A stretch of 64,000 nt of DNA, from the IMG/VR virus record IMGVR_UViG_3300017917_001342, positions 186,001 through 250,000 of that record. The stretch is one strand, 5' to 3'. Numbering within the stretch: position 1 is the first letter of the stretch; the number at the start of each line of letters is the position of its first letter. Below, in pieces: positions 5,509 to 22,847 of this stretch. The position numbers and the translations under genes were made by a program. The notes under the pieces are model-generated. The model was given only the letters and a program-made list of their open reading frames with translations, did not search any database and was not told the DNA's origin.

Positions 5509-6105
5509 CTAGCTGACCAATGGGTCTGTTATAACTAACGACCCGTCTTTTCTCTGCATGATATTATCACTGTGTAAGTCTATATAAAACTTACCTAGTT
5601 TAGTTAATCGCTCCATCACGGCTGCAATATCTGGATATTCTTCGTTGAGTTTATCTATTTGATCTTGATACCCAACAGGGTCGTCTGTTTTAAAAAATTG
5701 TCGCAATGTTTCTAACAGATTATGTAATTCATCTCGGTTAACTGGATACAATTTTTCCATGCGTACAGAGTAAGTGTTGTCATTTATGCGTATAAACTTA
5801 CCTTTGATCCTAGGAACGGCTGATAGGTTTTGATTGTTACGTGCAAAATTTAGATATGTAAAATACCCTGGATCATTGTTGAACACTTTAAACACCCAGG
5901 GATATCCGGGTTTTTCAAAAACTACTCCGTATGCGCCACGACCTAGTTTAGTAAATCCCAGCTCTTCTAATTCAAACACGAAATGTTGCCAGGCATTTTC
6001 TTTTTTTGTGTAATTATTAGGATCTGTGTCACCTAGACCTTTTGCAGCAACACCCACATGTGATTGCTTGATACGCTGTACACCTGTTATTTCATTAACA
6101 CGCAT
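5509..6105 (-). CDS. Ser/Thr protein kinase, T7 gp0.7 kinase-domain-like
   Basis: Gly loop LGRGAYGVV, VFK lysine, catalytic DLHSDNIM, ITDP; overall pattern resembles the T7 0.7 kinase as I recall it. Confidence 0.8.
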   Translation of the reverse strand: MRVNEITGVQRIKQSHVGVAAKGLGDTDPNNYTKKENAWQHFVFELEELGFTKLGRGAYGVVFEKPGYPWVFKVFNNDPGYFTYLNFARNNQNLSAVPRIKGKFIRINDNTYSVRMEKLYPVNRDELHNLLETLRQFFKTDDPVGYQDQIDKLNEEYPDIAAVMERLTKLGKFYIDLHSDNIMQRKDGSLVITDPLVS

Positions 6106-6728
6106 TAGTCTCTAGGTCCTAAACCAGACTTCTTGAGTAGATCTTTAAGCGCATTAACTTGATCATCCGCGGTCTTAGGCTTTTCACTTTTAACTTTGTA
6201 GCGATCATTGCCAATGGTAGCTAGTGTACCGCCAATGAACTGTTTGATGATATGTTGTGCAAAACCAATGGCACTTGATATTGGCATACCAGTTTTTTGT
6301 GCAATGGCACTAGCAAGATCAACTGCTGTAAATTCACCAAGTTCGCGCATTGCATTCATAGCTACTTTCGTAACACGTATCTGTGCGTCTATAGACTGCT
6401 GTACACCATGTGGAACATCTGCACCACCGTCACGATCTTCTTCATGCCAACCGTAGCGTTTATCACCCACACGATCTACACAGCATTTGAAATCACTTAC
6501 CACTGTCTTAAGTAGATCAACAATAGAAAAATCACTGTCAGGGTATAGTCTGCGAATATGATCGGCCCAGTCTTGTACACTGATACCATTTTCTCCTGCG
6601 TTCTTAACAGCTTCTAATGCATCAAGTATACGAGTCTGTGTTTCTGGATCATGCTTTTTCAAACGACGCTCAATTTGAAAATTAACGGATGGTTTATCTG
6701 CAATAGACTCTTTTAGTTTTTTTGGCAT
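6105..6728 (-). CDS. Hypothetical protein, possibly two winged-helix-like units
   Basis: 207-aa ORF coupled to the kinase; repeated helical units ending (V/I)G(D/N)(K/D)RY; N-terminal LKE/S. Confidence 0.65.
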   Translation of the reverse strand: MPKKLKESIADKPSVNFQIERRLKKHDPETQTRILDALEAVKNAGENGISVQDWADHIRRLYPDSDFSIVDLLKTVVSDFKCCVDRVGDKRYGWHEEDRDGGADVPHGVQQSIDAQIRVTKVAMNAMRELGEFTAVDLASAIAQKTGMPISSAIGFAQHIIKQFIGGTLATIGNDRYKVKSEKPKTADDQVNALKDLLKKSGLGPRD

Positions 6729-6758
6729 TCGAGCAGTCTTTCTTTTTATCAGTTGAGT

Positions 6759-6764
6759 TATTTA
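6759..6764 (-). promoter_or_regulatory. Late-type promoter TAAATA for the kinase operon
   Basis: TATTTA on the + strand, 30 nt upstream of the 6728 start. Confidence 0.6.
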
Positions 6765-6779: not shown

Positions 6780-6807
6780 TTGACACTGTGTCCAAACCTG
6801 CTATATT
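6780..6807 (+). promoter_or_regulatory. sigma70-type early promoter with extended -10
   Basis: TTGACA, 16 nt, (TGC)TATATT, then an (AC)7 leader and GGAG RBS. Confidence 0.75.
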
Positions 6808-7925: not shown

Positions 7926-10900
7926 ATGAAAATCAATCAAATTATCAAGCTCAATGAAGAAGATCCCATGGGAGTCGGTAATGACTGGGTAGGGTCAGAT
8001 GGCATTGTAAATGATTTAGAGACTAACAATAGAATTGTAAAAATTACAGGTGAAATAGCTGGTGCACCAGGTGCCACTGCTGAAGAAATTATAGATACAC
8101 CATGGTATAAACGATGGTATAAAAACATGGGCTATGGTATAACGAAACTAGGCCGTGGTGCAAAGTGGACATTAAAATGGGTAGCTGTTCCAGTTATTGC
8201 ATTGTATGATTGTTACAATGCCTATCAAGAAATCGCTGCAATACCAAAAGACGATCCAGATAGATTAGAAAAAGGCACAGCTATAATTTCTAAATTAGTT
8301 GCATCGTACGGCTTACCAGTTGTTGGGGGTTATATAGGTGCATTAATAGGTGCTGGCGTAGGTGTATGGGCAGGTGGTATAGGTGCTTTACCGGCATCAA
8401 CAATTGGTGCACTTATTGGAACTGCTAGTGCAATAACTGCACAGGTAGTATATGGCGACGATATAGATGCAGAAATTGAAAAGCTAGTTAGTGCAATTTT
8501 TGATGTAATTGACAGTGAAGATTCAGAAACTACTACAACACCGCAAGACACTGAATCTAATACTTCACCTGTTCCGGCCGGACAACCTAACTTTGATAAT
8601 TTATCATATGAAGATGCATGGAAGGCAGCAAGAAAATTAGCCACAGAACTAGATCCAGATGAACCTGGGTCTTATTCCTTTGTGTGGCAAGGAAAAACTT
8701 ATCCGACAAGTTCAAAAGATGAACCGTTAATACCAGCCGAACGTAGACGTAATTTAATTACATTAAATCAACTAAACGAAGGTATTGGTTCAGATATCGG
8801 TGCAGTTATAAAAGACCTGTTTAAAGGTGCTAAAACACTAGAGCCAGAAATAAAACAAGGAGCAGATGCAGCCGCAGATGCAGCAAGAGCCGCTGAAGAC
8901 GCAGCCGCTGCATTAAAAGCTGGTCAAAGTGCAGAAGACGCAGCAAACGTTGCAAAAGAATTAAACATTGCAATAAGAGAAAACAATAAATTCCTTGCTG
9001 GACTATTAAATGACGCTAGTCATGTTGTAGAGTTAAACGGAAAGAAATATGCTAGGTATTATAGTCCTGCAAAAGACAAATGGATATGGACAGATATACA
9101 AGCCGCCGAAGCAGGCGGTAAACGATCATCTGGGTTTGTAGCCGATGCAACTGCTAAAGAATTAGATGATCTGATTAAATCTGGTACAGACACTGCAACA
9201 GACGCTGCAAAAGTCGCAGACGATGCTGCAAAAGCTGCTGACGATGCTACAACTACACCGCCTGCTGCCGCAGATGACGCTGCAACATCAACTACACCAA
9301 AACCGGCAGAACCTACAACACCTAAAGCCCCAGAACCTGCAACACCCGCAGCGCCATCTAGACTTACACCTGAATACATAGCAAAAATGAAAGCTAAGCC
9401 TGTAAGTAAATGGACTGATAAAGAACTTGCAGAATGGGGTTATCCGCCCGAACTTAGAAATGCAGTGAGTTTTATACAAAAAACAGATATTGATATGCTG
9501 ATACCTCTGGCTCAAGCATACAAAGTACCAATGCTCAAGAGTATTGCACAGTTAGCAATGAAAACGCCTGGCGCATTGTTCAGAGCTGTTAAATTACCAG
9601 TTACCAATCCAATTGCAATTTTGTTTATTACGGCCCCGGCTGCATTGACATTTTTTAAAGGTGTATTAGAACTTGATCCGTCTGATCCTCAATACAAAGA
9701 AAAATTAACAAAACTAGTTGTTGAATTTGTTGAAACTGTTGGTATCGGTGTTGCTGCTTGGTACATAAGTGGATTTGCCGGTAAAAAGTTAGCTGGCTTG
9801 TTAGGGCTATCAGAAGCTGGTGCATTTGCTTGGTTATTAAAATGGGTTGCTAGAGGCGGTACTATCTGGGCAGTAAACGAAAATGCAACAATACAATCGT
9901 TAATACAAGACCTTATAGGTAAAGGTGCTGATGCAATTGTTGGACCGACTACAAACAATAACGCAACAATAAAAACTAATCCCCTATATAAACAAGGTTT
10001 TGATTGGGCAAAAGCTCGAGGATATTCAGATCACGACTCTGATGCATTTGCTAGACATATTGTTCAGCAAGGCGGATTCCGTAACGAATATAAGTTTAAC
10101 GAACATGCAACTAACACATTTGCTCTTGCATGGTTGTACAAACAATTAAACGAATCTAACAGTCCAGTTAGAATTGTAAAGATAAACAAACACATTAAAA
10201 ATCTGTTAGAATACTTTGACAATTCTAATGCAGTGCATAAATTTGCAATTTCATTGTCGGAATCTATCAGTTTCAATGAAGAACAAACAAATAATTTTAT
10301 GACTAATATAACTGCTGCTATTGCGGCTAACACCAAAGGCGACAAAATGGGTGCGCAAAAAGCATTAGATGCAGCTAAGCAAAGTCAACCTGCAACAGCA
10401 CAAGATCAAATTAATCAAAAGAAAGTACTAGATCAAATGGCTAGAACCAACCCTGGATTAAACATACCGAACACCAATCAAAATGTAACAGAAGACGATC
10501 CGATGGGCGCAGGTAATGATTGGGCAACTACTGCAAATGCAAATGATCCAACTGCAAAAGGCACAGATCTACTTGCTGCGTATAATGAATTTGCTGCAAA
10601 ATATCCTGCTGCTAAATTCTTATTGGACATTGTACCTGTTACAGGTACTGCAACCAGTGTTATTGATGCAAGTCAAGACCTATACAACGGAAAATACGGA
10701 AAAGCTGCACTTGATATTCTAGGTGCTATACCAGGTTTCAAAATTGGAAAATATATAAGTCAAGGTCTAGCTAAAGCTATAAAAGCTGCAAATGTAACTA
10801 CTAAAACTGCAAACTATGCAAACGCTACAGCAGGACTTGTAGGCAATGAAATCAACGAATCACCTAAAGTAGGCGATCACATGATGTTGGAATTGGCAGA

Positions 10901-12959
10901 TGGCCGCGTTGTGGTTGCACCAATTGCAGAACTGCGCGGCAATGGTATAGTAGTAGAACTAGACGAAACTGGTAACCAGTGGTTAGAAGAAAGTCCAGAA
11001 CATCATGCCCTTAAGATAGGTCAAGGTGACGGACACCCATTGAGTACTACAGCCGAAATTTGGAACGCTATGATAGATCAGTTACCAAGCGATACACCGG
11101 ACGGTTGGGCAGAAGTATTCATTAGTATGCAAAATCAAACGGGTCAGCCTGCTAGAATCATGCCAAGACTTTGGTCGCAAATTTGGCGTCAACAGCACAA
11201 TGCGCTAGGGGATAGCCTGACTAGAGTTGATATGACAAATTGGGCAGAAGAAGTAGGTAAAGCATTAGACAGATCAGGTTTAGTTGAATCATCAATAGAA
11301 CCATCTAACAGCAATAAGTTAAAGAAACATCTGGATCCTAAAGACCCTGCAATGCTAGCAGTATGGATGGCAAGTCGTGCTGGTATAAAAGGTGTACCGG
11401 TTGACAAATTTGCCAAAGCCAAAGCTGTACAAAGCGGATTGCCAGCAGACCACTGGTGGAAAAAGATTAAAAAACTAGTGCAAGAAGGTGCAGTACCAAC
11501 AGTGCCTAGACTATTAGCTGCTAGAGATATTGAGCCTCTGGTACATTTTGAAGGCGACTATTACATAGTAAGTCACAACGATGGCAAACATTTAAAGTAC
11601 GATCTAGTTAAAAAAGTAGTAGCAACAACTGATCGTAACACACCTGCATATCAACATGTAGATCATCTAGACACAGGTCTACACAGGATTACTAAAGAAC
11701 AGCTTCGCAGATTAGCTAATGTTGCAATGGAAGCAGATAAACTTGCAGATGGTGAGGACGATACTCCTGATTTGCCAGACCTACTAGGCGTTATTGCACA
11801 GGTAATGGGCCGCAAAGTGCGTAAGCATCCAGATGCATTGTCAACTACCGTTAAGAAATCTGACATGGGTTATGTAGTCAGTAACCTACTGGTTAGACAC
11901 TTAGATGGTACAGAAGCACAGGATTTGAAAAATGCATTGCATCGTGCAGGATACAATGTATCAAAAGTCATTATCAATCCAACAACTATATTGGTAATAC
12001 TGAAAACTACAAAAACAACTCCTAATACCACAGCTATAATAACTGCTACTCCGCAACCAGATGTAGTAGGTGGACTTGCAGAAAGTGCCTATGCTATGGA
12101 AAAGCGTTATTACATAGTTCGTAAAGACGTTCCCACTGCACCAGTACCGGGTATGAGCGGCTATCACCAAAAGAGTGAAGCTGATAAAAAACTTGCCAGC
12201 ATGAAGAACAGTGATCAATATATGGTTCGTGCAATTGACAGCAAGCGTTTGCCAAAAGATGAAATTGCAGAAGCACGTAGAGATTTTAACTTTGACGAAA
12301 ACGATATTGCACGTATAGCAGCAATGGATGATCTTGATGCTGCTAAACGATATGCTATCAAATTGATAACAGCTAAAACTCGTAGACCAATGACTAAAGA
12401 TAAGATCATGTGGTTTACAAATTCTATCAATGATACCAAGACAATGAATCGTTTAGTCAAAATGCTTTACGACATGATGCTAAGTGGCGAAGGTCATGGT
12501 GTTATTGGTGATAGATATTCTACTGGTAAAAGCAGTTATCGCAGACAGTTCGATGAAGAATCACAACGTCTAGATCCAAAATGCTGGAAGGGTTATCGTA
12601 AGCAAGGCACTAAAGTTAAAGACGGAGTTCGTGTTAACAACTGTGTAAAAGTCAACGAAGAAATAAACGAAGCAGAATACCAAGGCAAAAGTGTACCTCT
12701 CAACAAGCCAATACGTACAAGCCCAAGTGAAGGCGGTAAGTTCAAAGTCTATGTAAAGGATCCTAAAACTGGTAACATCAAAATGGTACGTTTTGGTGAT
12801 ACTACTGGGTTGACTATCAAACGTGATGATCCAGAACGTCGTAAGAATTTCCGTGCAAGACACCATTGCGATAATCCAGGTCCAAAAACCAAAGCACGCT
12901 ATTGGTCCTGTAAGATGTGGACTCGCAAGCCTGTTGGTCAAGTGTTGAAAGGAAAATAA
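7926..12959 (+). CDS. Large modular (polyprotein-like) putative internal virion protein, 1677 aa
   Basis: Start moved to MKINQIIKLNEE. Gly-rich hydrophobic segments, PT-TG-like segment, Pro/Ala linker, C-terminal basic Cys-containing mini-domains; many [ILV]-x-E junctions. Confidence 0.8.
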   Translation: MKINQIIKLNEEDPMGVGNDWVGSDGIVNDLETNNRIVKITGEIAGAPGATAEEIIDTPWYKRWYKNMGYGITKLGRGAKWTLKWVAVPVIALYDCYNAYQEIAAIPKDDPDRLEKGTAIISKLVASYGLPVVGGYIGALIGAGVGVWAGGIGALPASTIGALIGTASAITAQVVYGDDIDAEIEKLVSAIFDVIDSEDSETTTTPQDTESNTSPVPAGQPNFDNLSYEDAWKAARKLATELDPDEPGSYSFVWQGKTYPTSSKDEPLIPAERRRNLITLNQLNEGIGSDIGAVIKDLFKGAKTLEPEIKQGADAAADAARAAEDAAAALKAGQSAEDAANVAKELNIAIRENNKFLAGLLNDASHVVELNGKKYARYYSPAKDKWIWTDIQAAEAGGKRSSGFVADATAKELDDLIKSGTDTATDAAKVADDAAKAADDATTTPPAAADDAATSTTPKPAEPTTPKAPEPATPAAPSRLTPEYIAKMKAKPVSKWTDKELAEWGYPPELRNAVSFIQKTDIDMLIPLAQAYKVPMLKSIAQLAMKTPGALFRAVKLPVTNPIAILFITAPAALTFFKGVLELDPSDPQYKEKLTKLVVEFVETVGIGVAAWYISGFAGKKLAGLLGLSEAGAFAWLLKWVARGGTIWAVNENATIQSLIQDLIGKGADAIVGPTTNNNATIKTNPLYKQGFDWAKARGYSDHDSDAFARHIVQQGGFRNEYKFNEHATNTFALAWLYKQLNESNSPVRIVKINKHIKNLLEYFDNSNAVHKFAISLSESISFNEEQTNNFMTNITAAIAANTKGDKMGAQKALDAAKQSQPATAQDQINQKKVLDQMARTNPGLNIPNTNQNVTEDDPMGAGNDWATTANANDPTAKGTDLLAAYNEFAAKYPAAKFLLDIVPVTGTATSVIDASQDLYNGKYGKAALDILGAIPGFKIGKYISQGLAKAIKAANVTTKTANYANATAGLVGNEINESPKVGDHMMLELADGRVVVAPIAELRGNGIVVELDETGNQWLEESPEHHALKIGQGDGHPLSTTAEIWNAMIDQLPSDTPDGWAEVFISMQNQTGQPARIMPRLWSQIWRQQHNALGDSLTRVDMTNWAEEVGKALDRSGLVESSIEPSNSNKLKKHLDPKDPAMLAVWMASRAGIKGVPVDKFAKAKAVQSGLPADHWWKKIKKLVQEGAVPTVPRLLAARDIEPLVHFEGDYYIVSHNDGKHLKYDLVKKVVATTDRNTPAYQHVDHLDTGLHRITKEQLRRLANVAMEADKLADGEDDTPDLPDLLGVIAQVMGRKVRKHPDALSTTVKKSDMGYVVSNLLVRHLDGTEAQDLKNALHRAGYNVSKVIINPTTILVILKTTKTTPNTTAIITATPQPDVVGGLAESAYAMEKRYYIVRKDVPTAPVPGMSGYHQKSEADKKLASMKNSDQYMVRAIDSKRLPKDEIAEARRDFNFDENDIARIAAMDDLDAAKRYAIKLITAKTRRPMTKDKIMWFTNSINDTKTMNRLVKMLYDMMLSGEGHGVIGDRYSTGKSSYRRQFDEESQRLDPKCWKGYRKQGTKVKDGVRVNNCVKVNEEINEAEYQGKSVPLNKPIRTSPSEGGKFKVYVKDPKTGNIKMVRFGDTTGLTIKRDDPERRKNFRARHHCDNPGPKTKARYWSCKMWTRKPVGQVLKGK

Positions 12960-12960
12960 T

Positions 12961-13410
12961 ATGCGCTTGTCTGAAATGCTCACATTTGATCAAGACACTA
13001 TAGACCATTTTGCAGAGATACTAGAAAAAGGTGAACCCTGGGCTATACAAACGATCTACGACGAATTAGAAGAATATGGTATACCCGACGGTGAGGAAGC
13101 TGTATTGTTTAGAGAACTGCTACCTGAGATAGTTGCCTGGTTTAATAACGCAATAACTCATGAGGCTCTTGCATATTCTGTAATAGATTACGCAATATTT
13201 CTAATACAGAACGAAAATCTTACAGCATTAATACCATTTGTCGTTAGAAGTTTAAAAGCAAATAAAACCGCAGTAATTAAACATCTGTTAACATTGATAA
13301 AAACCAATCACGAAGGTGCATTAGCAAGAGATTTGTTCAATGATCTATCAAAGTTTAACCTAAATTGGCCTGAATTAGCTGTAATTAAAAAAAGTTTAGA
13401 AGCGTTTTAA
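12961..13410 (+). CDS. Single WPEL-module protein
   Basis: MRLSEML leader; ends NLNWPELAVIKKSLEAF. Confidence 0.8.
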   Translation: MRLSEMLTFDQDTIDHFAEILEKGEPWAIQTIYDELEEYGIPDGEEAVLFRELLPEIVAWFNNAITHEALAYSVIDYAIFLIQNENLTALIPFVVRSLKANKTAVIKHLLTLIKTNHEGALARDLFNDLSKFNLNWPELAVIKKSLEAF

Positions 13411-14142
13411 ATGAGCGATAGCCCCTATACAGTTGTTAGTAAATCGTTTGATGAATTAAATGCTGCAAGTGAAGAAGCGCAGATTGCAGCAGTTAAAGCC
13501 AGACCAAATCTAATAACAAAAATTGATAATCCCAGTGCAGCAGTGCAATGGGCAGCAATTGAAGCTCACGCAATTGTTGCCAGATACTTAGAGCATCTCG
13601 ATGAGCGTGTACAACGAAAACTGATAGAAATAGATTATCGTAATCTACGTTACATAAACAATCCATCGCCTAGTATACAGTTAGCAGCAGTAACAGAAGA
13701 TCCTAAAAGTATTCAGTATATTACCAATCCAACTCCAGAAGCACAGGTTGTAGCAACTAAAAAATGGCCCGAGGCTATACGATACATCAGTAGTCCAACC
13801 GAAGATGCGCAGGTAAATGCAGTTCTTGGTCATCCGTGGTCTATAGAACACATTGCTGAGCCTTGTGTGCAAGCACAAAAAATTGCAATATATAGTCAAC
13901 CAGGTACAATGTTTGACTTGCAATGGCAGTTAGATCCTAATATCTTCAAAGAAGATGTAATCAAAACCGCCATTATTCGCACGATATTAACATCGTTAAA
14001 AAAGGACGGTAATACATATCAGGCAAGAAGATTTATCAATTTTTTAAAATCTTTTGATGTACAATGGCCTGAACTCGCAGTTATAGAACGTAGCATAGGC
14101 AACGAACCAGATGATGAATATGACGAAGGAATTCAACTATGA
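13411..14142 (+). CDS. Short helical-repeat protein (~23-aa repeats) plus C-terminal WPEL module
   Basis: About 6 repeats of P[ST]xxxQxxAVxxxPxxIxYIxN; ends VQWPELAVIERSIG. Confidence 0.8.
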   Translation: MSDSPYTVVSKSFDELNAASEEAQIAAVKARPNLITKIDNPSAAVQWAAIEAHAIVARYLEHLDERVQRKLIEIDYRNLRYINNPSPSIQLAAVTEDPKSIQYITNPTPEAQVVATKKWPEAIRYISSPTEDAQVNAVLGHPWSIEHIAEPCVQAQKIAIYSQPGTMFDLQWQLDPNIFKEDVIKTAIIRTILTSLKKDGNTYQARRFINFLKSFDVQWPELAVIERSIGNEPDDEYDEGIQL

Positions 14143-14888
14143 AAGCCAATGAATTCATTAACGAATCTATCAAATGGCAAGGCAACTCAGGTGCTACTCA
14201 AGCACGCCAAACTGATCATACTATTGAGGAAGCACGACGTTACGTTAAAGAAAACTATCCTCGAAATAAAACCTATACTATCAGCAGACTTGAACCAGGG
14301 TTTAGAGCATTGGATGCCAAAACCGGCTCTACTAATCCCAGTGCAGCAAATGCTACACTAAATCAAGAAGCAGCACTGAACCAGTTTGTTGAAATCTTTA
14401 AACTAAAACAAAATCCCTACATGAGCGGCAGCGAGCAAGTAACTGGCAGTATAGGATTCAGTTGGCATGTAGGTGAAGATAAAGAGCGCAAGCATGCCAT
14501 CTTCTATTATGAAGATCGCGGCATGGGCAATGACAGTATCACCATTGCTGCAAAAACCATTGTTGAACTCAAAGTAATGCAAGAAGTTCTTATTCATACA
14601 GGTCTTATCCCTGATCCTGATGAGGCCAAAGCAAAACGCACCGCTGACGCAGATAAACGTAGAGATGTACTTGCTAAAAAAGGCATTAAAATTGGTACTC
14701 GCATTACTGCTCGTAGACTAGACAACGGCGAAGTGTGGTTTGCTGGCAACGTAACTAGCATTGCACAAAACGGCTCTGTGGGTATTACTATTGATCAAGT
14801 AGATCCTGCTGTACAAGGTGTTACAGTTGGCAGTGTGTATAAAATGAAGCCAGGTAGTATTAGCAAAGACATGATCTCCAATGACTGA
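14139..14888 (+). CDS. Hypothetical putative internal virion protein
   Basis: Leader MKANEFINE/S closely resembles the T4 capsid-targeting sequence; beta-rich SH3/KOW-like C-terminus. Confidence 0.75.
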   Translation: MKANEFINESIKWQGNSGATQARQTDHTIEEARRYVKENYPRNKTYTISRLEPGFRALDAKTGSTNPSAANATLNQEAALNQFVEIFKLKQNPYMSGSEQVTGSIGFSWHVGEDKERKHAIFYYEDRGMGNDSITIAAKTIVELKVMQEVLIHTGLIPDPDEAKAKRTADADKRRDVLAKKGIKIGTRITARRLDNGEVWFAGNVTSIAQNGSVGITIDQVDPAVQGVTVGSVYKMKPGSISKDMISND

Positions 14889-14898
14889 TTATTTTCAA

Positions 14899-14913
14899 TA
14901 AATATCATAGGAG
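14899..14913 (+). promoter_or_regulatory. Late-type promoter TAAATA plus RBS
   Basis: ATAAATAT (core 14899-14904), AGGAG at 14909-14913. Confidence 0.7.
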
Positions 14914-14920
14914 ATTTATT

Positions 14921-15367
14921 ATGCGATTAGCAGATTTGTACGGCGACTTGTTTGAGTCTATCACAGCAGATGATATTAAAGATCCTATTTCCAAGGGACT
15001 AGTTCCTAATTTCATCCACAGTATGCCGTCTACTCATCTGCTAACAGGTATGGATCAATACTATCAATATTATAGATTCTTGATTGCCATTGCAGGTTAC
15101 CCGGAAGATTCCGACATACCATTAACTAGTGTTGTTAGGGATTGGCCTATGACAGTAGCATACACTACACAAGAAAAAGAAATGATAGATAAAGTTGCCA
15201 AACGTATGGGTATATCACCTACAGAAATTGCGTACGAAGGCAGTAAAGAATTACCCGATACCTACACTGTAAGTCCGGTAATGAAATTTTCAATGACTGA
15301 ATCTCAACACCGCAAATTAAAAAATCTAGCAGTTCTAACAGAGGCAATGATAAATGAAACTAAATGA
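14921..15367 (+). CDS. Hypothetical protein, paralogous to the N-terminal domain of the next gene
   Basis: Shared YRF, (A/G)YTxxE and VSPVMxFxM(T/S)E motifs with 15354..15752. Confidence 0.8.
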   Translation: MRLADLYGDLFESITADDIKDPISKGLVPNFIHSMPSTHLLTGMDQYYQYYRFLIAIAGYPEDSDIPLTSVVRDWPMTVAYTTQEKEMIDKVAKRMGISPTEIAYEGSKELPDTYTVSPVMKFSMTESQHRKLKNLAVLTEAMINETK

Positions 15368-17153
15368 TCTGTTTGAACAGTTTGGATCCACAAAACTTGC
15401 ACAAAATGCAGAAGCAGTAATACCACCTGTTGCGATATTCCCAGATCTTGACAACAGCAACAGTTACCTGCAATATAGATTCACAACTAATATGGCTGCG
15501 GCACGAGCGATTGCCGCCGGTGATGTACCATTTAAAAAAATTGTACCGTGGGAACAGTATCTAACTGTGGTAGGCTATACCCCAGAAGAAATAGAAACTG
15601 TGCGTCTAGCAGCAGAGCAATCTGGTATGAGAATGGAAATGCTTAACACTACCCCTAGCCACGAGCCAGATTGGGTTAACAAAGTTAGCCCGGTGATGCC
15701 GTTTCATATGAGCGAAACTAAGCGTAAAACCAAAGGCAAAGGTTTGTTTGAAAGCGATGGCAAACAGGTACTGGTAGTATATCCAGGACGTTTTCAGCCG
15801 GTACACCGAGGCCACGGTGCAGTGTTTAATGCACTACAAGAAGAGTTTGGTGGCAATGTGTTTATGGCAACGTCTGATAAAATAGAACCAGATCGCAGTC
15901 CATTCAGCTATGCAGATAAATCACTAATGGCTCGTGCTGCTGGTATACCTAGCGATAAATTTGTCAAGGTTAAAAATCCCTACAGTCCAATTGAAATTAC
16001 CAAACTCTACGATCCCAACAACACAGTGCTGATACTAGTTGTTGGTGCTAAAGACATGGTGGATGATCCTAGATTTAAATTTGGTAACAAAAAAGACGGA
16101 TCACCTAGTTACCTACAAAAATTTAAAGATATTGCTGTAGCTGAGCCTATGAGTAAACACGGCTATATTATGGAAGCACCCACTGTGGAATTTCTTGTAT
16201 TAGGACATCCCGTTACAAGTGCTACACAGGTACGTAATCTCTATGCTAAAAGTGATAACGTAAAACGAGATAGAATACTTAAAGATCTCTTTGAACAAAA
16301 CCGTGTAGAACTGAGACAACTGTTTGACAGTAAATTTGGTTCTGTGCAGGAAACTATCAGTGAATCTTTACACAGCGACCAAATTGTAGACCACATGCGC
16401 AATTTCTTAAAAATTGCACAACGTGAATTGCAATTAGCACAATTGCCTAAAATTATTTGGACTAGTTCAAGTACTGCTCATGGTGAGCGACCAACATTCG
16501 GGAAATTCCAAAATGACAACAACACTATTACAGTTAGCATTGTTAACAGGCATCCTATTGACATCATGCGTACACTTGCGCATGAACTCACGCATTACAA
16601 GCAAGATATCACAAAGGGTCTAAACGCCAACAGTGGTGATACTGGCAGTCCAGAAGAAGATGAGGCCAATGCTATGGCAGGCCGTATTATGCGGCATTTT
16701 GATGAAAAATACCCGCATGCATTTAACGCTAAACCGGTAGTATCAGAACAAATTAAACGTAGAAGTAAAACTACTAATGAAACTGATACAACTACACCAC
16801 AAACTAAAATGAATCCTGCAGATATAGAAGCAGACATGCTTGCTAATACAAGTGGTATGCCAGCGGATCCAAATGCTGCTAAAAACCTAGCGAAAAAGCT
16901 CGGTATTAAGCTGCTTGGTAAAATGGCAGGGAAAGCTATTGCTGGACCTGTAGGTGGTGTTGTAGGTGGTGTAATAGCAGGCGAAATTGCAGACCGCGCT
17001 CTTGTTAAAGAAGAAGTCTGGGATAAACCAAATCCTGTTAAAAAACATAAAAAGCTAGATGCTGACGATAAGGCTGCTGCAAAACGCAGAGCCAAAGCTG
17101 CTGGTAGAAAATACCCAAACATGGTTGACAACATCTGGGCTGCTAGACGATAA
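15354..17153 (+). CDS. Multidomain protein: unknown domain + HxGH nucleotidyltransferase + zincin metallopeptidase + Gly-zipper + basic peptide
   Basis: YPGRFQPVHRGH...SATQVR; RTLAHELTHYKQ...EDEANAMAG; GPVGGVVGGVIAG. Confidence 0.85.
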   Translation: MKLNDLFEQFGSTKLAQNAEAVIPPVAIFPDLDNSNSYLQYRFTTNMAAARAIAAGDVPFKKIVPWEQYLTVVGYTPEEIETVRLAAEQSGMRMEMLNTTPSHEPDWVNKVSPVMPFHMSETKRKTKGKGLFESDGKQVLVVYPGRFQPVHRGHGAVFNALQEEFGGNVFMATSDKIEPDRSPFSYADKSLMARAAGIPSDKFVKVKNPYSPIEITKLYDPNNTVLILVVGAKDMVDDPRFKFGNKKDGSPSYLQKFKDIAVAEPMSKHGYIMEAPTVEFLVLGHPVTSATQVRNLYAKSDNVKRDRILKDLFEQNRVELRQLFDSKFGSVQETISESLHSDQIVDHMRNFLKIAQRELQLAQLPKIIWTSSSTAHGERPTFGKFQNDNNTITVSIVNRHPIDIMRTLAHELTHYKQDITKGLNANSGDTGSPEEDEANAMAGRIMRHFDEKYPHAFNAKPVVSEQIKRRSKTTNETDTTTPQTKMNPADIEADMLANTSGMPADPNAAKNLAKKLGIKLLGKMAGKAIAGPVGGVVGGVIAGEIADRALVKEEVWDKPNPVKKHKKLDADDKAAAKRRAKAAGRKYPNMVDNIWAARR

Positions 17154-17184
17154 TTAATGCTGCAACTGCACAACGGAGGTTGTA

Positions 17185-17355
17185 GTGACATTATCAGCTA
17201 GTGACAGAGAAACACTTGGACGTATATTGTTCGAAACTGTGTGTCCAAGTAGAAATTGGCTAGATGTGTTACCAATGGAACGTAGACAGTGGGTGGCAGG
17301 CGCTGTTAAAATATATACTTTTGATTTAGATCAAATACGGCACGGCAGATACTAG
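17185..17355 (+). CDS. Small hypothetical protein, 56 aa (GTG start, not in the ORF track)
   Basis: GGAGGT RBS, then MTLSASDRETLGRILFE...RHGRY*; fills the intergenic gap. Confidence 0.55.
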   Translation: MTLSASDRETLGRILFETVCPSRNWLDVLPMERRQWVAGAVKIYTFDLDQIRHGRY

Positions 17356-17366
17356 TTGTTTTAAAC

Positions 17367-17372
17367 TAAATA
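17367..17372 (+). promoter_or_regulatory. Late-type promoter TAAATA, 5 nt from the ATG
   Basis: CTAAATATCTGCATG. Confidence 0.7.
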
Positions 17373-17377
17373 TCTGC

Positions 17378-19693
17378 ATGAAAATTAGCAGTATATTCAA
17401 AAACACAACTATATTAACTGATGGCAGGTCGTGGCGTCGTGACCCTGACGACGACATGTATAGTCGCGACAAAACATCAAAATACAAAATCAAAGATATT
17501 GTAGATGAACCGCCAGAAGAATTGGAAATCTCAGATGAAGAAAACTTCAAAGGGAAAGACCGAATAATTAAAATTCCTCATCTGAATTGTATATTTCTCA
17601 TTACTGCACATTGGCAATATAGACAATCACTTAGACATGGCAATTTAGACATTGCCATTGAAAAGCTATCAAACTTATTTGAACGTAACTACGACGTGAT
17701 ATCTAAACTTCCATATGGGTCGGAGTTTGGATTAATAGATCAAAAGAATTACAAAACTGTTTTTACCAAGCGTAGATCTAAAAACGGTACTACTGTATAT
17801 GCAACGAAAACCCTGCTTTCGCCTGAGATGAACCTAAGACCGTCGCAGTATTTTTTTAGAGAATCGTCTGACAACAGTGTGTTCTTAAAAGACCTTGTAA
17901 AAATGTCAGTTGGTATGCCGGACGCTGATTTTTGGATAAGACGCAGTGGCCAATTAAAAAGTCTCGGTGAACCTAGCAAACAATTTGACCCTGACAAAAT
18001 AGGTATCAAAGTTACTGCTACCAATATTATAGATCCAAACTATCTCTATTATGTGTTTATGAATTTGCAAAACCAGGGCGTGTTTGCGCAAATGGCAACA
18101 GGATCAACTGGTTTACAACACATTAAAATCAGCAGTCTTGCAAAAATACCGTTTGCACTAAGTGAATCGCTAAATGAAAACGACGATGAACCTATACGTA
18201 TTAGACTGCGTGGTAATGAAGATACTGCAAAGCGTTGGATCAAAAGCGTATACGATCAATTCCCAGCAAATCCGTTAAATGATCGTCAACACGTTATGCA
18301 ATTTGGCGACGATGCATACGTAGTGTTTGAATTAACACCAAGTTTTAACCGCAGAGGTGCCGTAGAAGTCAAGTGGATAAGCGCACACCCACAACGCAAA
18401 GGTCTCGGTTCTAAAGCACTGAAAACGTTGCAAGATTTAGCGCAAAAGAACAATGTTATGCTTACTCTTTACCCATGGGAAAAAGGTGAGATTAGCCAAC
18501 ATGATCTCAAGCGTTATTATAAAAAGCATGGGTTCAGAGGCGAAGGCGGCGGTAGTGATTACATGAAGTGGGATCCGCTGAACGAAAAAGACTACGACGA
18601 TATAGACGACGATGATAACCGCACACCTGACATAGAAGGTGCTAAGAAATATGTACAGGCTGTAAAACGAGATTTTGATCAGTTTGGTGAGTTGCCAATT
18701 ACTGGCATAATGAATGATTTAGAATATCGCTATAACTTAGATCCATCAACGGTTGATCAAGTTCTACAGCCTGTTAAAGACGACATTGTAATCTACATAA
18801 ACACTGAATTTGGAAAAGGTGAATACAGTATATACGGTGCAGTGCGTCGTCTAGATAAACTGTACAGATCAGGTATCAGTTGGCACGAACTGTATCGCAT
18901 GTTAGATAATCACAAGCACAGTATTATAAAATACATGCTCAGTCAGATTAAAAAAGGTGCAACTGGTATGGTAATGGAAATGACTATCATACTCAAACGT
19001 ATGGGACTTGACTGGCCAGAACTTACTGCAATACAACGCAGTTTGCGTGCAGATAAGCAAGCATTGCCAGAATCATATTCAAAAGAACAACGTATTGAGT
19101 TTGCACAAAAAGCATTTGAGCGAGGTACTGTATACGGTTTTTGGCGATTAGATCTGCTTGATTTAAAAGCTAGCGAAGTACCAGGCGCTATAGAAATACT
19201 TAACGCTGATAAAGACCGTTTTATTAGTGCATTATTACGCATGGTTAAAGACGGTAGCTTTTCTGCTGTGAAATATGCATTAAAAAATTATAGACATCAC
19301 GGGCTGGATTGGCCAGAACTTGATGTTATAGAACGCAGTGTTAAACAGATATCTGAATCCGACAGTTATGATGATCTGCGTAAACGCAACATGGACAAAG
19401 TGCTTAAATCGTTTAAGCTTGGTGCGTGGAACGGCTTCAAAAATCTAGATTTTTTTAATATGAAAGCTGCTGAAGTTCCAGGTGCAGTAGAAGCGTTAGA
19501 ACAGTTTAAAGAACAATTTGTTAAGATGCTGTTAACTCGCATGAAGAGTGGTGACTATGGTGATATAGGTACTGCTAGAAACCTAGCTGCTCAGATGCAA
19601 GGTGTTGGTATGAGTTGGCCGGAATTAGACATTGTTATAAAAAGTGCTAACAAAGCGTTTGATGATTATGATAAAAGTTTAGGCAACGACTGA
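17378..19693 (+). CDS. Multidomain protein: possible RNase-like domain + HsdS-type TRD + GNAT + three WPEL-terminated modules
   Basis: ITAHWQYRQSLR; IDPNYLYYVF...ATGSTGLQHIKISSLAKIPF; QRKGLGSKAL...RYYKKHGF; WPEL x3. Confidence 0.8.
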   Translation: MKISSIFKNTTILTDGRSWRRDPDDDMYSRDKTSKYKIKDIVDEPPEELEISDEENFKGKDRIIKIPHLNCIFLITAHWQYRQSLRHGNLDIAIEKLSNLFERNYDVISKLPYGSEFGLIDQKNYKTVFTKRRSKNGTTVYATKTLLSPEMNLRPSQYFFRESSDNSVFLKDLVKMSVGMPDADFWIRRSGQLKSLGEPSKQFDPDKIGIKVTATNIIDPNYLYYVFMNLQNQGVFAQMATGSTGLQHIKISSLAKIPFALSESLNENDDEPIRIRLRGNEDTAKRWIKSVYDQFPANPLNDRQHVMQFGDDAYVVFELTPSFNRRGAVEVKWISAHPQRKGLGSKALKTLQDLAQKNNVMLTLYPWEKGEISQHDLKRYYKKHGFRGEGGGSDYMKWDPLNEKDYDDIDDDDNRTPDIEGAKKYVQAVKRDFDQFGELPITGIMNDLEYRYNLDPSTVDQVLQPVKDDIVIYINTEFGKGEYSIYGAVRRLDKLYRSGISWHELYRMLDNHKHSIIKYMLSQIKKGATGMVMEMTIILKRMGLDWPELTAIQRSLRADKQALPESYSKEQRIEFAQKAFERGTVYGFWRLDLLDLKASEVPGAIEILNADKDRFISALLRMVKDGSFSAVKYALKNYRHHGLDWPELDVIERSVKQISESDSYDDLRKRNMDKVLKSFKLGAWNGFKNLDFFNMKAAEVPGAVEALEQFKEQFVKMLLTRMKSGDYGDIGTARNLAAQMQGVGMSWPELDIVIKSANKAFDDYDKSLGND

Positions 19694-19694
19694 C

Positions 19695-21914
19695 ATGAAG
19701 TTAGATGATATATTTGAAGCAGGCCCAAAGATAGACAACATTCATGGTATGGGTGCTGTTGGTATAAGTGGTAATATCGACTACATGGGTTTACGAGTAT
19801 ACGTAAAACCCAGCGTGTTTCTCAAACTTGCATACAGTCATCCTAACCTTGATACTACATACATTCAACAACAGTTGTCGATTGGACAAGCTATCGGCGC
19901 ACCGTTTCTAAGTATTGCAATACCTGAATCGTGGATCAGTCCAGATTCACATTACGAAAAAGTTGTAGAAGGTGACCTAACTGATCCTGCTGAAATCACA
20001 GGTCATGAAGGTCGTCATCGCATGGCTGCTATATTGAAGGAGTACGGAGATGTTCCTGTTGAAACACATCTTGTGTTTAATGGTCTTCGTCGTCGTCATA
20101 TTACTGATAACATGATCGAACGACTAAACAGTGATATATTAAACGAACATGGTAAACTTCTAATAGGGCCATGGTTTAGTTTAACAGAAACTATCACCGA
20201 AGCCGATGCAGATTTTATCTATCGCAATTTTCTAAAAGACATTAACATATACGGTATAACAAAAGCATTACATAAAATTTCTCTACGTATTGAACGTGCT
20301 GATGCAGACGGTGAAGATCCAGAGACGACTAGAAGTATTTTAACTGATCACAAAGAGTTAATACTTAAAGAACTATTATCTTGGATAAAACTATGTGAAT
20401 ACAAAGAAGATATCTACGAAGTTATCAAAGCTATCAAGTATGTTAATAGTATAGGTATTGATTGGCCAGAATTTGAAACAATTAAAAAAGGCTGTAAAAG
20501 TATTGCCGCCTCGGCGCCGAGTAATCCTTTTCAACTTGGTTATCACGAAATTAATGAAAACTTTGCAGATGGCAAAGGACCAGGTAGACCCGGTGATAGT
20601 CGCAGACATGGTATACCCAAACATGCAACTCTGTCACAGTTAGATAAAATTGGTAAAGGGTCTGGACGTAAGGCGCAGCTAGCACGTTGGCAAGCAAATA
20701 TGCGTAGAGGTCGTGCTAAAGTTAACGAAAATGAACTAGGCAGCTACATGCCATTAGATATTGCACAACTTAAAGAATTACTATTAGTTGTGCAAGATCA
20801 ACAGGAAATTGTAGATGATCACAGTTTTGATGTAGAACCGGGAACCGTTGCATATAAGCAAATAGAACAGGAATATCGTGCATTAACTGCTATCGAATAT
20901 GTTGTAAAAAACAATATCAAAGCAATTAATAATCCCGAACTACAGCCAGGCGCTATTTTTGTATATGATTGGGAATACGATGATGCAATTGGTGCAGCTC
21001 AATTACAAGTAACTGGTACAGTGGCCGAATTGAAATGGTTAGGTAGCTATAACAGCTCTGGTAAGCAACTGATAAAGCAGGGATTGTCACATGCTAAAAC
21101 AATGGGTGCTAAGTCTGTTAATCTAACTAGCAAATGGGGCAGTGCTGAATACTATAAAAAGCAAGGCTTTACACCAAAAGATAATGTGGCAGATAACCCA
21201 ATAACAGATGTCGGTACATCATTTACAAAAGACATAGATGAAGCATCTCAACAGTATAAAAAGATCAGTCCTGAACTGATAAAAGACATTGTTGCAACTG
21301 TGCCACAGACTCGTGAAATATGGTTCCATGGTAGTAGAGCAACAGGCGCACATCGACGTGACAGTGATTGGGATATACTAGTAGTAGTACCAGATGACAT
21401 TAAAGGCAATACCTATATAGATATTATAGAACTGTTGCGTAACATAGAACGAAACTATCCGAACTACGATATACAACCTGCTCACCCACGTAATATGATC
21501 ACTAATATTGCTAGAGAAGAAGGTGTATTGTTGTGGTCACATAAACCGCCAGTTACTGAAGCCATTGCACCACATGGCGATTTTAACAACGAATTGCGCA
21601 TGATGAAAGCTGGTACTAAGCCTGCTGCAATAATTGATCCTATGGTATATGAACACATGTATAAACCATTGGTAAATGATTACGGATGGGAAGTGGTTAC
21701 ATTTAAAAACAATTATGGTCGTAGATACGTAGTAGGACAGATGGGCGAATATGCTCGTATTAAACGTATTGCTGATCTAGTTGACAACATGAATAAAAAA
21801 ATGGAACAAGGTGTTAAAGCAACACCTGAGTATCATATACAATTAGGTCGCTTACTAGGTTATAGTGAACAAGATATTGAAGATTTCTTAGAAAAAATTG
21901 CAATGAATTCTTGA
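19695..21914 (+). CDS. Multidomain protein: ParB/Srx-like + WPEL + basic peptide + GNAT + MNT nucleotidyltransferase + unknown domain
   Basis: HEGRHR; WPEF; GKQLI...AEYYKKQGF; FHGSRATG...DSDWDILVVV; GRLLGYS. Confidence 0.8.
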   Translation: MKLDDIFEAGPKIDNIHGMGAVGISGNIDYMGLRVYVKPSVFLKLAYSHPNLDTTYIQQQLSIGQAIGAPFLSIAIPESWISPDSHYEKVVEGDLTDPAEITGHEGRHRMAAILKEYGDVPVETHLVFNGLRRRHITDNMIERLNSDILNEHGKLLIGPWFSLTETITEADADFIYRNFLKDINIYGITKALHKISLRIERADADGEDPETTRSILTDHKELILKELLSWIKLCEYKEDIYEVIKAIKYVNSIGIDWPEFETIKKGCKSIAASAPSNPFQLGYHEINENFADGKGPGRPGDSRRHGIPKHATLSQLDKIGKGSGRKAQLARWQANMRRGRAKVNENELGSYMPLDIAQLKELLLVVQDQQEIVDDHSFDVEPGTVAYKQIEQEYRALTAIEYVVKNNIKAINNPELQPGAIFVYDWEYDDAIGAAQLQVTGTVAELKWLGSYNSSGKQLIKQGLSHAKTMGAKSVNLTSKWGSAEYYKKQGFTPKDNVADNPITDVGTSFTKDIDEASQQYKKISPELIKDIVATVPQTREIWFHGSRATGAHRRDSDWDILVVVPDDIKGNTYIDIIELLRNIERNYPNYDIQPAHPRNMITNIAREEGVLLWSHKPPVTEAIAPHGDFNNELRMMKAGTKPAAIIDPMVYEHMYKPLVNDYGWEVVTFKNNYGRRYVVGQMGEYARIKRIADLVDNMNKKMEQGVKATPEYHIQLGRLLGYSEQDIEDFLEKIAMNS

Positions 21915-21945
21915 TTCAATATCAAATATCTAACATGCTTGTGTT

Positions 21946-22788: not shown

Positions 22789-22836
22789 TGTAATATTTGT
22801 TAAATATAGTTGAGAATTCACTCGACTGTTTTTTAA

Positions 22837-22842
22837 TAAATA
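22837..22842 (+). promoter_or_regulatory. Late-type promoter TAAATA, 5 nt from the ATG (second copy at 22801-22806)
   Basis: ATAAATATCATCATG. Confidence 0.7.
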
Positions 22843-22847
22843 TCATC

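What the first reader, a model, noticed from the sequence alone, without database searches (positions are those of the whole stretch)
5509..6764. T7 gp0.7-like kinase wired as a late, possibly virion-packaged protein
Seen: a compact 198-aa kinase with intact catalytic motifs. It starts MRVNEI, like the leaders of the internal-protein block. It is coupled to a partner gene with an LKE/S junction and lies behind a TAAATA motif, not a sigma70 promoter. Established: T7 0.7 is an early gene that phosphorylates host proteins. Inference: here the kinase may be packaged and injected, acting before any phage transcription; the partner may target or inhibit it.
Basis: partly seen in the sequence, partly recalled or inferred. 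Interest (0 to 1): 0.65.

Follow-up and report, generated by a model that had tools for sequence, protein, structure and literature searches.

The report
Late, leader-tagged T7-type phage kinase
A 518-kb freshwater phage carries a stripped-down T7-type protein kinase that sits behind a late promoter and starts with a short tag which, in the closest cultured relative, marks proteins found inside virus particles, so it may be delivered ready-made into the next host cell; this is not yet shown.

Summary
Window 5509-6105(-) encodes a 198-aa kinase of the phage T7 kinase family with its catalytic motifs intact and no T7 C-terminal shut-off domain. Its ATG overlaps the stop of a 207-aa gene (TAATG). 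That gene lies 30 nt behind a TAAATA box, and no sigma70-like promoter faces this way.

The window belongs to a 518,643-bp T4-superfamily phage. TAAATA is its most enriched upstream hexamer. It precedes the portal and the prohead protease, and the phage encodes a gp55-type late sigma factor. Late wiring is therefore well supported.

The start M-[KR]-hydrophobic-x-[DE]-hydrophobic is shared by about 25-28 otherwise unrelated proteins and by all four kinase paralogs. In Agrobacterium phage Atu_ph07, 16 of 16 annotated proteins with this start were detected in purified virions, against 38 of 198 others. Packaging is plausible but indirect.

Two cautions apply. T7 gp0.7 itself starts MNITDI, so part of the resemblance may be inherited. 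The "partner" is a conserved late tandem winged-helix protein that lacks an adjacent kinase in six of nine lineages, so a dedicated targeting or inhibitor role is not supported.

Verdict: a new variant of known kinds. There are no expression or proteome data for this phage.

The parts
5509..6105 (-). 198-aa kinase of the phage T7 kinase family, kinase domain only
   Evidence: phrog_15752 at E 5.9e-23. PF27024 on orthologs. hhalign against T7 gp0.7 gives probability 97.6%. AF2 model has pLDDT 86.8, and 466 protein-kinase-like PDB matches at E<=0.001.
6088..6105 (-). Codons 1-6 (MRVNEI): N-terminal tag of the type M-[KR]-hydrophobic-x-[DE]-hydrophobic
   Evidence: Conserved in all 27 orthologs and paralogs. 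Disordered in the model: residues 1-9 have pLDDT below 50. Matrix rank 26 of 682. Caveat: T7 gp0.7 starts MNITDI.
5935..5943 (-). Glycine-rich loop, G55-x-G57
   Evidence: Invariant columns in alignment A1.
5887..5889 (-). K73, the beta-3 lysine in V-F-K
   Evidence: Invariant in A1.
5563..5580 (-). Catalytic loop, D176-L-H-x-x-N181
   Evidence: D176 and N181 are invariant. The loop aligns with the T7 gp0.7 catalytic loop.
5518..5526 (-). D194-P195-L196, the counterpart of the T7 kinase DPV (DFG-like) motif. The protein ends two residues later.
   Evidence: D194 and P195 are invariant. The DPV motif is described in PMC13645617.
6105..6728 (-). 207-aa 'partner': a conserved late protein with two tandem winged-helix-like domains (about residues 28-94 and 107-179)
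   Evidence: No Pfam or PHROG match and no phage tblastn match. 22 metagenomic homologs. AF2 pLDDT 74. Only weak winged-helix matches in the PDB.
6705..6716 (-). Partner residues 5-8 (L-K-E-S): resembles a gp21-type cleavage site (hydrophobic-x-E, then cut)
   Evidence: E7 is invariant, S8 is kept in at least 90% of homologs, and the position two before E7 is always hydrophobic. Compare the predicted major capsid protein site L-F-E/S. Cleavage was not tested.
6759..6764 (-). TAAATA late-promoter core, 30 nt upstream of the partner ATG
   Evidence: The same box lies 21-30 nt upstream of the partner gene in 8 relatives.
6780..6807 (+). Strong sigma70-like promoter (TTGACA, 16-nt spacer, TATATT, with TG) that drives the divergent genes, not the kinase operon
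7926..35437 (+). Block of large late genes, many of which start with the same tag (starts at 7926, 12961, 14139, 14921, 15354, 17378, 19695, 22848, 23760, 24831, 34175)
   Evidence: Enzyme-like domains are seen in some members.

Best explanation
This is a minimal serine/threonine kinase of the phage T7 kinase family that a 518-kb T4-superfamily phage has re-wired.

Shown here:
- It is the second cistron of a two-gene operon.
- The only recognisable promoter for that operon is the clade's late-promoter box TAAATA. The phage encodes the gp55-type late sigma factor that reads such boxes.
- The kinase has lost the T7 C-terminal shut-off/DNA-binding domain.
- It starts with the tag M-[KR]-hydrophobic-x-[DE]-hydrophobic. 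About 25-28 unrelated late proteins of the same genome and its three tandem paralogs share that tag.

Inferred:
- The tag acts like the T4 capsid targeting sequence. It would bring the kinase into the prohead core, where the gp21-type protease may trim it after Glu5.
- The kinase would then stay in the filled head and leave with the DNA.
- It would phosphorylate host proteins, including defence proteins, before any phage gene is expressed. T4 does the same with its packaged Alt enzyme.

The upstream gene is an independent late winged-helix protein. The kinase has borrowed its late promoter; it is not a dedicated regulator of the kinase.
For: Family. Fold. Catalytic columns.

Late wiring:
- TAAATA occurs 90 times against 7.4 expected upstream of genes.
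- There are 204 copies in the genome against about 700 expected from base composition, and 95 of them lie in the 7% that is intergenic.
- The box precedes the portal, the prohead protease and a gene whose product starts like a tail sheath (sheath identity is my reading of the N-terminus, not tested).
- The gp55 homolog matches phrog_12791 at E 6e-84 and lies next to gp46/47-like genes.
- The box is kept before the partner gene in 8 of 8 relatives with GC content of 41-64%.
- No sigma70-like site lies within 120 nt on this strand.

Tag:
- 25 N-termini match the pattern, against 8 internal Met sites.
- It is conserved at the amino-acid level, not the codon level.
- It is linked to a TAAATA box directly upstream: 12 of 28 against 58 of 654, p=4e-6.
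- All kinase paralogs carry it, and one starts MKLNDLFE, identical to an unrelated 599-aa protein.
- Non-kinase proteins start MRINEI and MRFVEITG.

Head machinery: the protease is 34% identical to T4 gp21 and the capsid protein 31% identical to gp23.

Experimental link in the closest cultured relative, Atu_ph07: 16 of 16 tag-bearing annotated proteins are in the published virion mass-spectrometry list, against 38 of 198 others, p=4e-11.

Precedents:
- T4 CTS and Alt (PMC3012670 and PMC5694885).
- Virion-associated kinases in cyanophages (PMC10665884).
- T7 kinase as a broad anti-defence enzyme (PMC13645617).
Against: - There is no transcript or proteome data for this phage, and no RNA run holds it.
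- T7 gp0.7, which as far as I know is not a virion protein, starts MNITDIMNAI and scores higher on the tag matrix (6.6) than the target (4.2). A Klebsiella T7-like kinase starts MNYTDM. The start may therefore be inherited from the kinase family, with only K/R at position 2 new.
- The target's tag is a weak example. It lacks the hydrophobic residue at position 7 and the hydrophobic-x-E at positions 6-8 seen in the best tags.
- Atu_ph07 and Phosso have no kinase homolog, so the proteomic link concerns the tag, not the kinase.
- The Atu_ph07 list also contains likely contaminants such as replication proteins.
- The tag resembles the T4 CTS only in style, not in sequence.
Confidence: 0.5

Rival explanations
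1. The kinase is made late but stays in the cytoplasm. It would act late in infection on host or phage proteins, for example on RNA turnover or assembly. Its start is simply the ancestral N-terminus of the T7 kinase family, and the likeness to the tag is inherited or coincidental.
For: T7 gp0.7 starts MNITDI and a Klebsiella T7-like kinase starts MNYTDM. The target's tag score is modest. There are no virion data for any kinase of this family.
Against: - K/R at position 2 is fixed in 25 of 27 huge-phage kinases, whereas the T7-like phages have N or T there.
- One paralog has the exact 8-residue tag of an unrelated protein.
- Non-kinase genes in the same late operon carry the tag.
- In Atu_ph07, 16 of 16 tagged proteins are in virions.
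Confidence: 0.3
2. The partner and the kinase form a dedicated two-protein module. The winged-helix protein would bind the kinase to aim it or to hold it inactive until release.
For: There is a one-base stop/start overlap. Adjacency is kept in three lineages: the window, L011 and L024.
Against: Six of nine partner loci have no kinase next to them. In L020 the partner faces NadR/PnuC directly, as if the kinase was inserted later. Kinases in L025 and L026 and the three paralogs here have no partner.
Confidence: 0.12
3. The operon is expressed early or in the middle period from a promoter type not recognised here, and the TAAATA box is incidental.
For: Only consensus scans were possible. A middle-type promoter would not have been recognised.
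Against: TAAATA is roughly 3.5-fold depleted genome-wide, which makes an incidental copy unlikely. The box is kept at the same distance in 8 of 8 relatives. No sigma70-like site was found.
Confidence: 0.06

Closest known systems
T7 gp0.7 protein kinase (T7K; Pfam PF27024, PHROGs 15752 and 2828)
   Same: Same kinase domain family and the same catalytic columns, including the D-P-x motif in place of DFG (PMC13645617).
   Different: - 198 aa against 359 aa, with no C-terminal shut-off/DNA-binding domain.
- It lies behind a late-type promoter, whereas T7 gene 0.7 is an early gene (established knowledge).
- Four paralogs per genome.
- K/R at position 2.
T7-kinase homologs of jumbophages (Salmonella phage Munch, Escherichia phage G17) described in PMC13645617
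   Same: Diverged kinase-only homologs in very large phages that have lost the shut-off domain, with the valine of DPV not conserved.
   Different: That paper leaves their function open and says nothing about timing or packaging in the passages read. The Rak2-like phages I searched (CBB, fEgEco12, BF, XaC1) gave no match.
T4 Alt ADP-ribosyltransferase
   Same: A host-modifying enzyme with a short N-terminal propeptide. It is built into the prohead core, trimmed by gp21 and injected with the DNA (PMC5694885).
   Different: Different enzyme chemistry and no sequence relation. Packaging of the kinase here is inferred, not shown.
T4 internal proteins IPI-III and their capsid targeting sequence
   Same: A short conserved N-terminal tag on otherwise unrelated, fast-evolving late proteins. 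The tag ends in hydrophobic-x-E, and a gp21-type protease is present.
   Different: The tag sequence differs: T4 has MKTYQEFIAE, while here it is M-[KR]-[ILV]-x-[DE]-[ILF]. The cargo here is far larger and includes proteins with enzyme-like domains of up to 1677 aa.
Atu_ph07 virion proteins gp043, gp046, gp047, gp053-gp063, gp548, gp561
   Same: The same kind of N-terminal tag, with TAAATA boxes before many of these genes. All were detected in virions by mass spectrometry.
   Different: No sequence homology beyond the tag, and Atu_ph07 has no kinase.
Virion-associated protein kinases of cyanophages (S-CRM01, S-TIM5, S-CBWM1, S-CREM2)
   Same: Kinase-like proteins found by proteomics inside myovirus particles, some of them T4-like (PMC10665884).
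   Different: They belong to other kinase-like families (APH/ChoK/Rio2-like). S-CRM01 and S-TIM5 give no match to this family's profile, while positive controls matched.

Membership tests
Phage T7 kinase family (PF27024 / phrog_15752) | Significant match to the family profile and to T7 gp0.7 itself | tested here: met
   phrog_15752 at E 5.9e-23. PF27024 on orthologs. hhalign probability 97.6%, and BLASTP 25% identity at E 1e-7.
Phage T7 kinase family (PF27024 / phrog_15752) | Protein-kinase-like fold with glycine loop, beta-3 Lys, catalytic Asp/Asn and a D-P-x metal-binding motif | tested here: met
   AF2 pLDDT 86.8. 466 kinase-fold PDB matches. G55, G57, K73, D176, N181, D194 and P195 are invariant.
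Phage T7 kinase family (PF27024 / phrog_15752) | C-terminal shut-off/DNA-binding domain, as in T7 gp0.7 | tested here: not met
   The protein ends two residues after D-P-L. The alignment covers only T7 residues 52-217 of 359. This domain is also reported lost in jumbophage homologs, so it does not define the kinase family itself.
Phage T7 kinase family (PF27024 / phrog_15752) | Early expression from host-RNA-polymerase promoters | tested here: not met
   No sigma70-like site faces the operon. A TAAATA late box lies 30 nt upstream. This is motif evidence only.
Phage T7 kinase family (PF27024 / phrog_15752) | Protein kinase activity | not testable with these tools
   Needs purified protein.
T4-type capsid-targeted internal head proteins (CTS cargo) | Short N-terminal tag shared by non-homologous proteins of the same phage | tested here: met
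   25 N-termini match, against 8 internal sites. 28 N-termini score at least 4 on the matrix. The tag is conserved at the amino-acid level, not the codon level.
T4-type capsid-targeted internal head proteins (CTS cargo) | gp21-type prohead protease and a T4-like head gene module in the genome | tested here: met
   phrog_207 at E 3.6e-57, and 34% identity to T4 gp21. Portal and capsid protein genes lie in T4 order.
T4-type capsid-targeted internal head proteins (CTS cargo) | Tag ends in a hydrophobic-x-Glu cleavage site that is cut during maturation | tested here: inconclusive
   The kinase has V-N-E at residues 3-5 only. Many other tags have such a site at residues 6-12, but that count overlaps the tag definition. 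Cleavage itself cannot be tested here.
T4-type capsid-targeted internal head proteins (CTS cargo) | Physical presence in virions | not testable with these tools
   There is no proteome for this phage. In Atu_ph07, 16 of 16 tagged proteins are in the virion list, but none of them is a kinase.
T4-type capsid-targeted internal head proteins (CTS cargo) | Tag is specific to packaged proteins | tested here: inconclusive
   T7 gp0.7, which as far as I know is not a virion protein, starts with a similar sequence and scores 6.6 on the matrix.
gp55-dependent (T4-type) late promoter | TATAAATA-like core a short distance upstream of late and structural genes, with no -35 element | tested here: met
   The consensus of 102 sites is a-TAAATA-t-c. 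The first T of the T4 octamer is not conserved. The box precedes head and other structural genes here and in Atu_ph07.
gp55-dependent (T4-type) late promoter | Phage encodes the late sigma factor | tested here: met
   phrog_12791 at E 6e-84 and phrog_234 at E 6e-21.
gp55-dependent (T4-type) late promoter | Transcripts start just downstream of the box, late in infection | not testable with these tools
   No RNA runs hold this phage.
Dedicated kinase-regulator gene pair | The two genes co-occur across lineages | tested here: not met
   They are adjacent in 3 of 9 partner loci. Kinases also occur without the partner.

The most novel reading that the evidence does not exclude
A T4-superfamily megaphage uses a short N-terminal tag to load a large and varied cargo of late-made proteins with enzyme-like domains into its capsid. 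The cargo would include four T7-type kinases, nucleotidyltransferase-like proteins and a 1677-aa protein. The kinases would be injected with the DNA and act as time-zero, broad-spectrum, phosphorylation-based anti-defence enzymes.
Probability: 0.4. Interest if true: 0.8.

Novelty: new variant of a known kind. Interest (0 to 1): 0.62.

Why it matters
The T7 kinase was recently shown to disarm many bacterial defences by mass phosphorylation. That paper leaves the role of its jumbophage relatives open.

If the kinase is packaged, it would be present before any phage gene is read. Abortive-infection and nucleic-acid-sensing defences decide the outcome at that moment. This would extend the T4 Alt and internal-protein principle to a new chemistry.

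The tag itself may matter more than the kinase. It is short, recognisable from sequence, linked to late promoters, and backed by virion proteomics in a cultured relative. It could be used to predict the injected protein cargo of uncultured huge phages directly from metagenomes.

Tried and rejected
- Near-identity DNA search of the phage collection found no match.
- The partner has no Pfam or PHROG match, no tblastn match in phages, and no significant PDB match by sequence. Foldseek gave only weak winged-helix rows, the best at E 9e-3.
- Complex prediction on kinase plus partner returned no verdict (score 0.00). I do not use it as evidence either way.
- No T7-kinase homolog was found in these phages. 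Empty answers show little, although positive controls matched.
  - Atu_ph07 and Phosso.
  - CBB, fEgEco12, BF and XaC1.
  - S-CRM01 and S-TIM5.
- The block proteins have no homologs in the 150 kb of Atu_ph07 that I read.
- I guessed that the gene after the Rhizobium phage kinase is an Alt-like ADP-ribosyltransferase. No profile supported this, so I dropped it.
- Hydrophobic-x-E is enriched after the tag, but the count overlaps the tag definition, so I do not use it.
- Ser+Thr+Tyr content is lower in early-like genes than in late-like genes (15.1% against 16.3%, p=0.007). The direction fits a kinase that meets early proteins, but the effect is small and confounded, so it is only a hint.
- No RNA runs hold the phage, and read laying was not used.
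- The large representative protein search was not needed.
- No other genetic code was used. The standard code gives 93% coding.

Full report
WHERE THE WINDOW LIES. The window is bases 186001-250000 of a 518,643-bp virus record with direct terminal repeats. The standard code gives about 93% coding. The DNA polymerase is closest to Agrobacterium phage Atu_ph07 (49% identity) and Sinorhizobium phage Phosso (47%), followed by Rak2-like jumbophages. The head genes match T4-type families in T4 order: portal, prohead protease, then major capsid protein. Identities to T4 are 34% to gp21 and 31% to gp23. Near-identical DNA occurs in pond, freshwater and aquaculture metagenomes from about 14 studies. 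No RNA run holds it.

THE OBSERVATION. ORF 5509-6105(-) encodes 198 aa and ORF 6105-6728(-) encodes 207 aa. The stop of the upstream gene and the ATG of the downstream gene share one base, as TAATG.

The 198-aa protein matches the PHROG family of the T7 gp0.7 kinase at E 5.9e-23. It is about 30% identical to kinases of Klebsiella T7-like phages. Its metagenomic orthologs carry the precomputed tag PF27024, Phage_T7_kinase.

Against T7 gp0.7 read from the T7 record, BLASTP gives 25% identity at E 1e-7. A profile comparison gives 97.6% probability over T7 residues 52-217. In 27 homologs the glycine loop (G55, G57), K73, D176, N181 and D194-P195 are invariant. The last pair corresponds to the D-P-V motif that replaces DFG in the T7 kinase (PMC13645617).

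The AlphaFold model is confident (pLDDT 86.8) and matches hundreds of kinase-fold structures. The protein ends two residues after D-P-L, so it lacks the T7 C-terminal domain.

THE PROMOTER. TAAATA lies on the minus strand at 6759-6764, 30 nt before the partner ATG. The one strong sigma70-like site in the 120-nt intergenic region points the other way. No such site lies within 120 nt on the kinase strand.

Across the genome, TAAATA is the most enriched hexamer in the 60 nt before genes: 90 observed against 7.4 expected. The genome holds only 204 copies on both strands, against about 700 expected from base composition. Of these, 95 fall in the 7% that is intergenic.

The box precedes about 100 genes. 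They include the portal, the prohead protease, a small head-module protein, a gene whose product starts like a tail sheath (my reading of the N-terminus, not tested) and several very large genes. The consensus of 102 sites is a-TAAATA-t-c.

The phage encodes a late sigma factor of the T4 gp55 type (phrog_12791, E 6e-84), next to gp46/47-like genes. In Atu_ph07 the same box precedes genes annotated as virion structural proteins. I therefore read TAAATA as the gp55-type late promoter. This rests on motif and homology. No transcript data exist.

The box is kept 21-30 nt before the partner gene in all eight relatives I could read, including two with 64% GC.

THE N-TERMINAL TAG. Many genes in the + strand block after 7926 start with M-[KR]-[ILV]-x-[DEQS]-[ILF]. 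Genome-wide, 25 of 682 predicted proteins match this pattern at or near their start, against 8 among the deeper, internal Met positions.

Identical tags use different codons, so selection acts on the protein. Tagged genes have a TAAATA box directly upstream far more often than other genes: 12 of 28 against 58 of 654, p=4e-6. Most of the remainder lie downstream in operons that start with such a box.

A scoring matrix built only from the block proteins places the target kinase 26th of 682. It is above 99.7% of internal Met contexts.

The genome has three more kinase paralogs in tandem at 65.3-67.3 kb. They lie in a late operon behind two non-kinase genes that also carry the tag, MRVDEFF and MRINEINS. 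One paralog starts MKLNDLFE, identical to the unrelated 599-aa block protein. All metagenomic orthologs keep the tag, while the next 20 residues vary.

WHAT THE TAG MEANS. In T4, internal proteins and Alt carry 10-20-residue N-terminal capsid targeting sequences. These bring them into the prohead core and are removed by gp21, which cuts after Glu (PMC3012670 and PMC5694885). Read from the T4 record, these starts are MKTYQEFIAE for IPII and IPIII, MAKINELLRE for gp24 and MLKEQLIAE for gp22. They share the style of the tags here but not their sequence.

The best test available was the published virion proteome of Atu_ph07, which lists 131 of 714 proteins (PMC6102473, Table S5). I chose 150 kb of that genome without regard to the tag. 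In it, 16 annotated proteins start with the pattern: gp043, 046, 047, 053-063, 548 and 561. All 16 are in the virion list, against 38 of 198 other proteins (Fisher p=4e-11).

gp053, predicted at 87 kDa, peaks in a gel band where proteins of about 20 kDa run. This points to processing and is my inference from the table. These proteins share no homology with the cargo here beyond the tag, which matches the picture for the T4 internal proteins.

THE CAVEAT. T7 gp0.7 itself starts MNITDIMNAI and scores 6.6 on my matrix, above the target's 4.2. A Klebsiella T7-like kinase starts MNYTDM. A proline about 16 residues in is also shared.

The kinase family may therefore have had a start of this shape before it entered huge phages. 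If so, only K/R at position 2 is new, and MRVNEI on this kinase is not independent evidence for packaging.

Four things remain:
- All four kinases lie behind late boxes.
- They sit in operons with other tagged genes.
- One paralog carries the exact tag of an unrelated protein.
- Non-kinase proteins start MRINEI and MRFVEITG.

A Rhizobium T4-like phage kinase starts (M)KSFSEHIAES, close to the T4 IPII/III tag. This is a lead, not a test.

THE PARTNER. The 207-aa protein has 22 metagenomic homologs and no family match. Its model (pLDDT 74) shows two helix-helix-helix-hairpin units at about residues 28-94 and 107-179. The only PDB matches are weak ones to tandem winged-helix proteins.

Residues 5-8, L-K-E-S, are conserved as hydrophobic-x-E-S. 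They look like the predicted capsid-protein maturation site L-F-E/S. However, the basic N-terminus is not a tag of the above type.

Of nine partner loci, the kinase follows in three and is absent in six. In L020 the partner faces NadR/PnuC directly, as in this window minus the kinase. The simplest reading is that the kinase was inserted behind an existing late gene and now uses its promoter.

MECHANISM AND ODDS. Late transcription from the box at 6759-6764, with translation of the kinase coupled to the partner: about 0.85. Entry into the prohead through the tag: about 0.5. Delivery with the DNA and action before phage transcription: about 0.4.

The likely activity is broad phosphorylation of host proteins, as shown for the T7 kinase (PMC13645617). 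That extrapolates from a relative with 25% identity.

Virion-associated kinases are known from cyanophage proteomes but belong to other families (PMC10665884). My literature searches found no phage kinase of the T7 family reported in virions. This covers only the held library.

HOUSEKEEPING. No alternative genetic code was named.

Noticed in passing
window 17378, 22848, 35445 (+) and 53513 (-); about 20 genes genome-wide: TAAATA lies only 4-7 nt before the ATG, with no Shine-Dalgarno sequence. If transcription starts a few bases after the box, as in T4, these late mRNAs would be leaderless or nearly so.
   Followed up: partly
window 7962-7988 and 10497-10523 (+): In the 1677-aa tagged protein, the motif D-P-M-G-x-G-N-D-W follows the tag directly (residue 13) and recurs at residue 858 after V-T-E-D. 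This suggests an internal cleavage site, so the protein may be a polyprotein.
   Followed up: partly
window 6780-7806 (+): A near-consensus sigma70-like promoter is followed by an (AC)7 run at 6824-6838 in the 5' leader. Next come a 131-aa membrane-type protein and a 182-aa protein with a lipoprotein-like signal. These look like early genes lying back to back with the late operon.
   Followed up: no
window 3630-5334 (+) and just upstream of the window: A NAD salvage cluster (NAMPT-like, PnuC, NadR-like) converges on the kinase gene with a 1-nt gap and no terminator between them. The same neighbourhood is seen in relatives L011, L020 and L023.
   Followed up: partly
genome 495464-495640 (+); proteins P0041 and P0043: A 58-aa tagged protein (MRATEFINES, then G-G-x-G-R-V-V-P-G-V-N-T-T) is fused in some relatives in front of the kinase. 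The old kinase start then lies internally.
   Followed up: no
L032, L040-L044 (Pseudomonas phage Astolliot) and L026: Other phages also carry the T7-type kinase as a tandem triplet, and Astolliot has a fourth copy elsewhere. This is the same layout as in this genome.
   Followed up: no
L031 1184-1849 (Rhizobium phage RHph_I1_18): A T7-family kinase with a TTG start begins (M)KSFSEHIAES, close to the T4 IPII/IPIII capsid targeting sequence MKTYQEFIAE. The next gene starts MISFKSHLNES.
   Followed up: partly
window 15354-17153, 17378-19693 and 19695-21914 (+); genome 51876-53402: Some tagged late proteins carry enzyme-like domains: cytidylyltransferase-like (E 5e-9), Pol-beta-type nucleotidyltransferase (E 4e-8), amidoligase-like (E 3e-7) and a weak, sub-threshold GNAT match (E 7e-3). 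If the tag means packaging, they are candidates for injected effectors.
   Followed up: partly
L033 122-151 (T7 gene 0.7): The N-terminus of T7 gp0.7, MNITDIM, fits the huge-phage tag pattern except at position 2. The role of this conserved start in T7-like kinases appears to be unexplored.
   Followed up: partly
window 62311-63999 (+): A large ORF starts with collagen-like G-x-y repeats ([10 protein letters not shown]...). It is probably a fibre protein.
   Followed up: no
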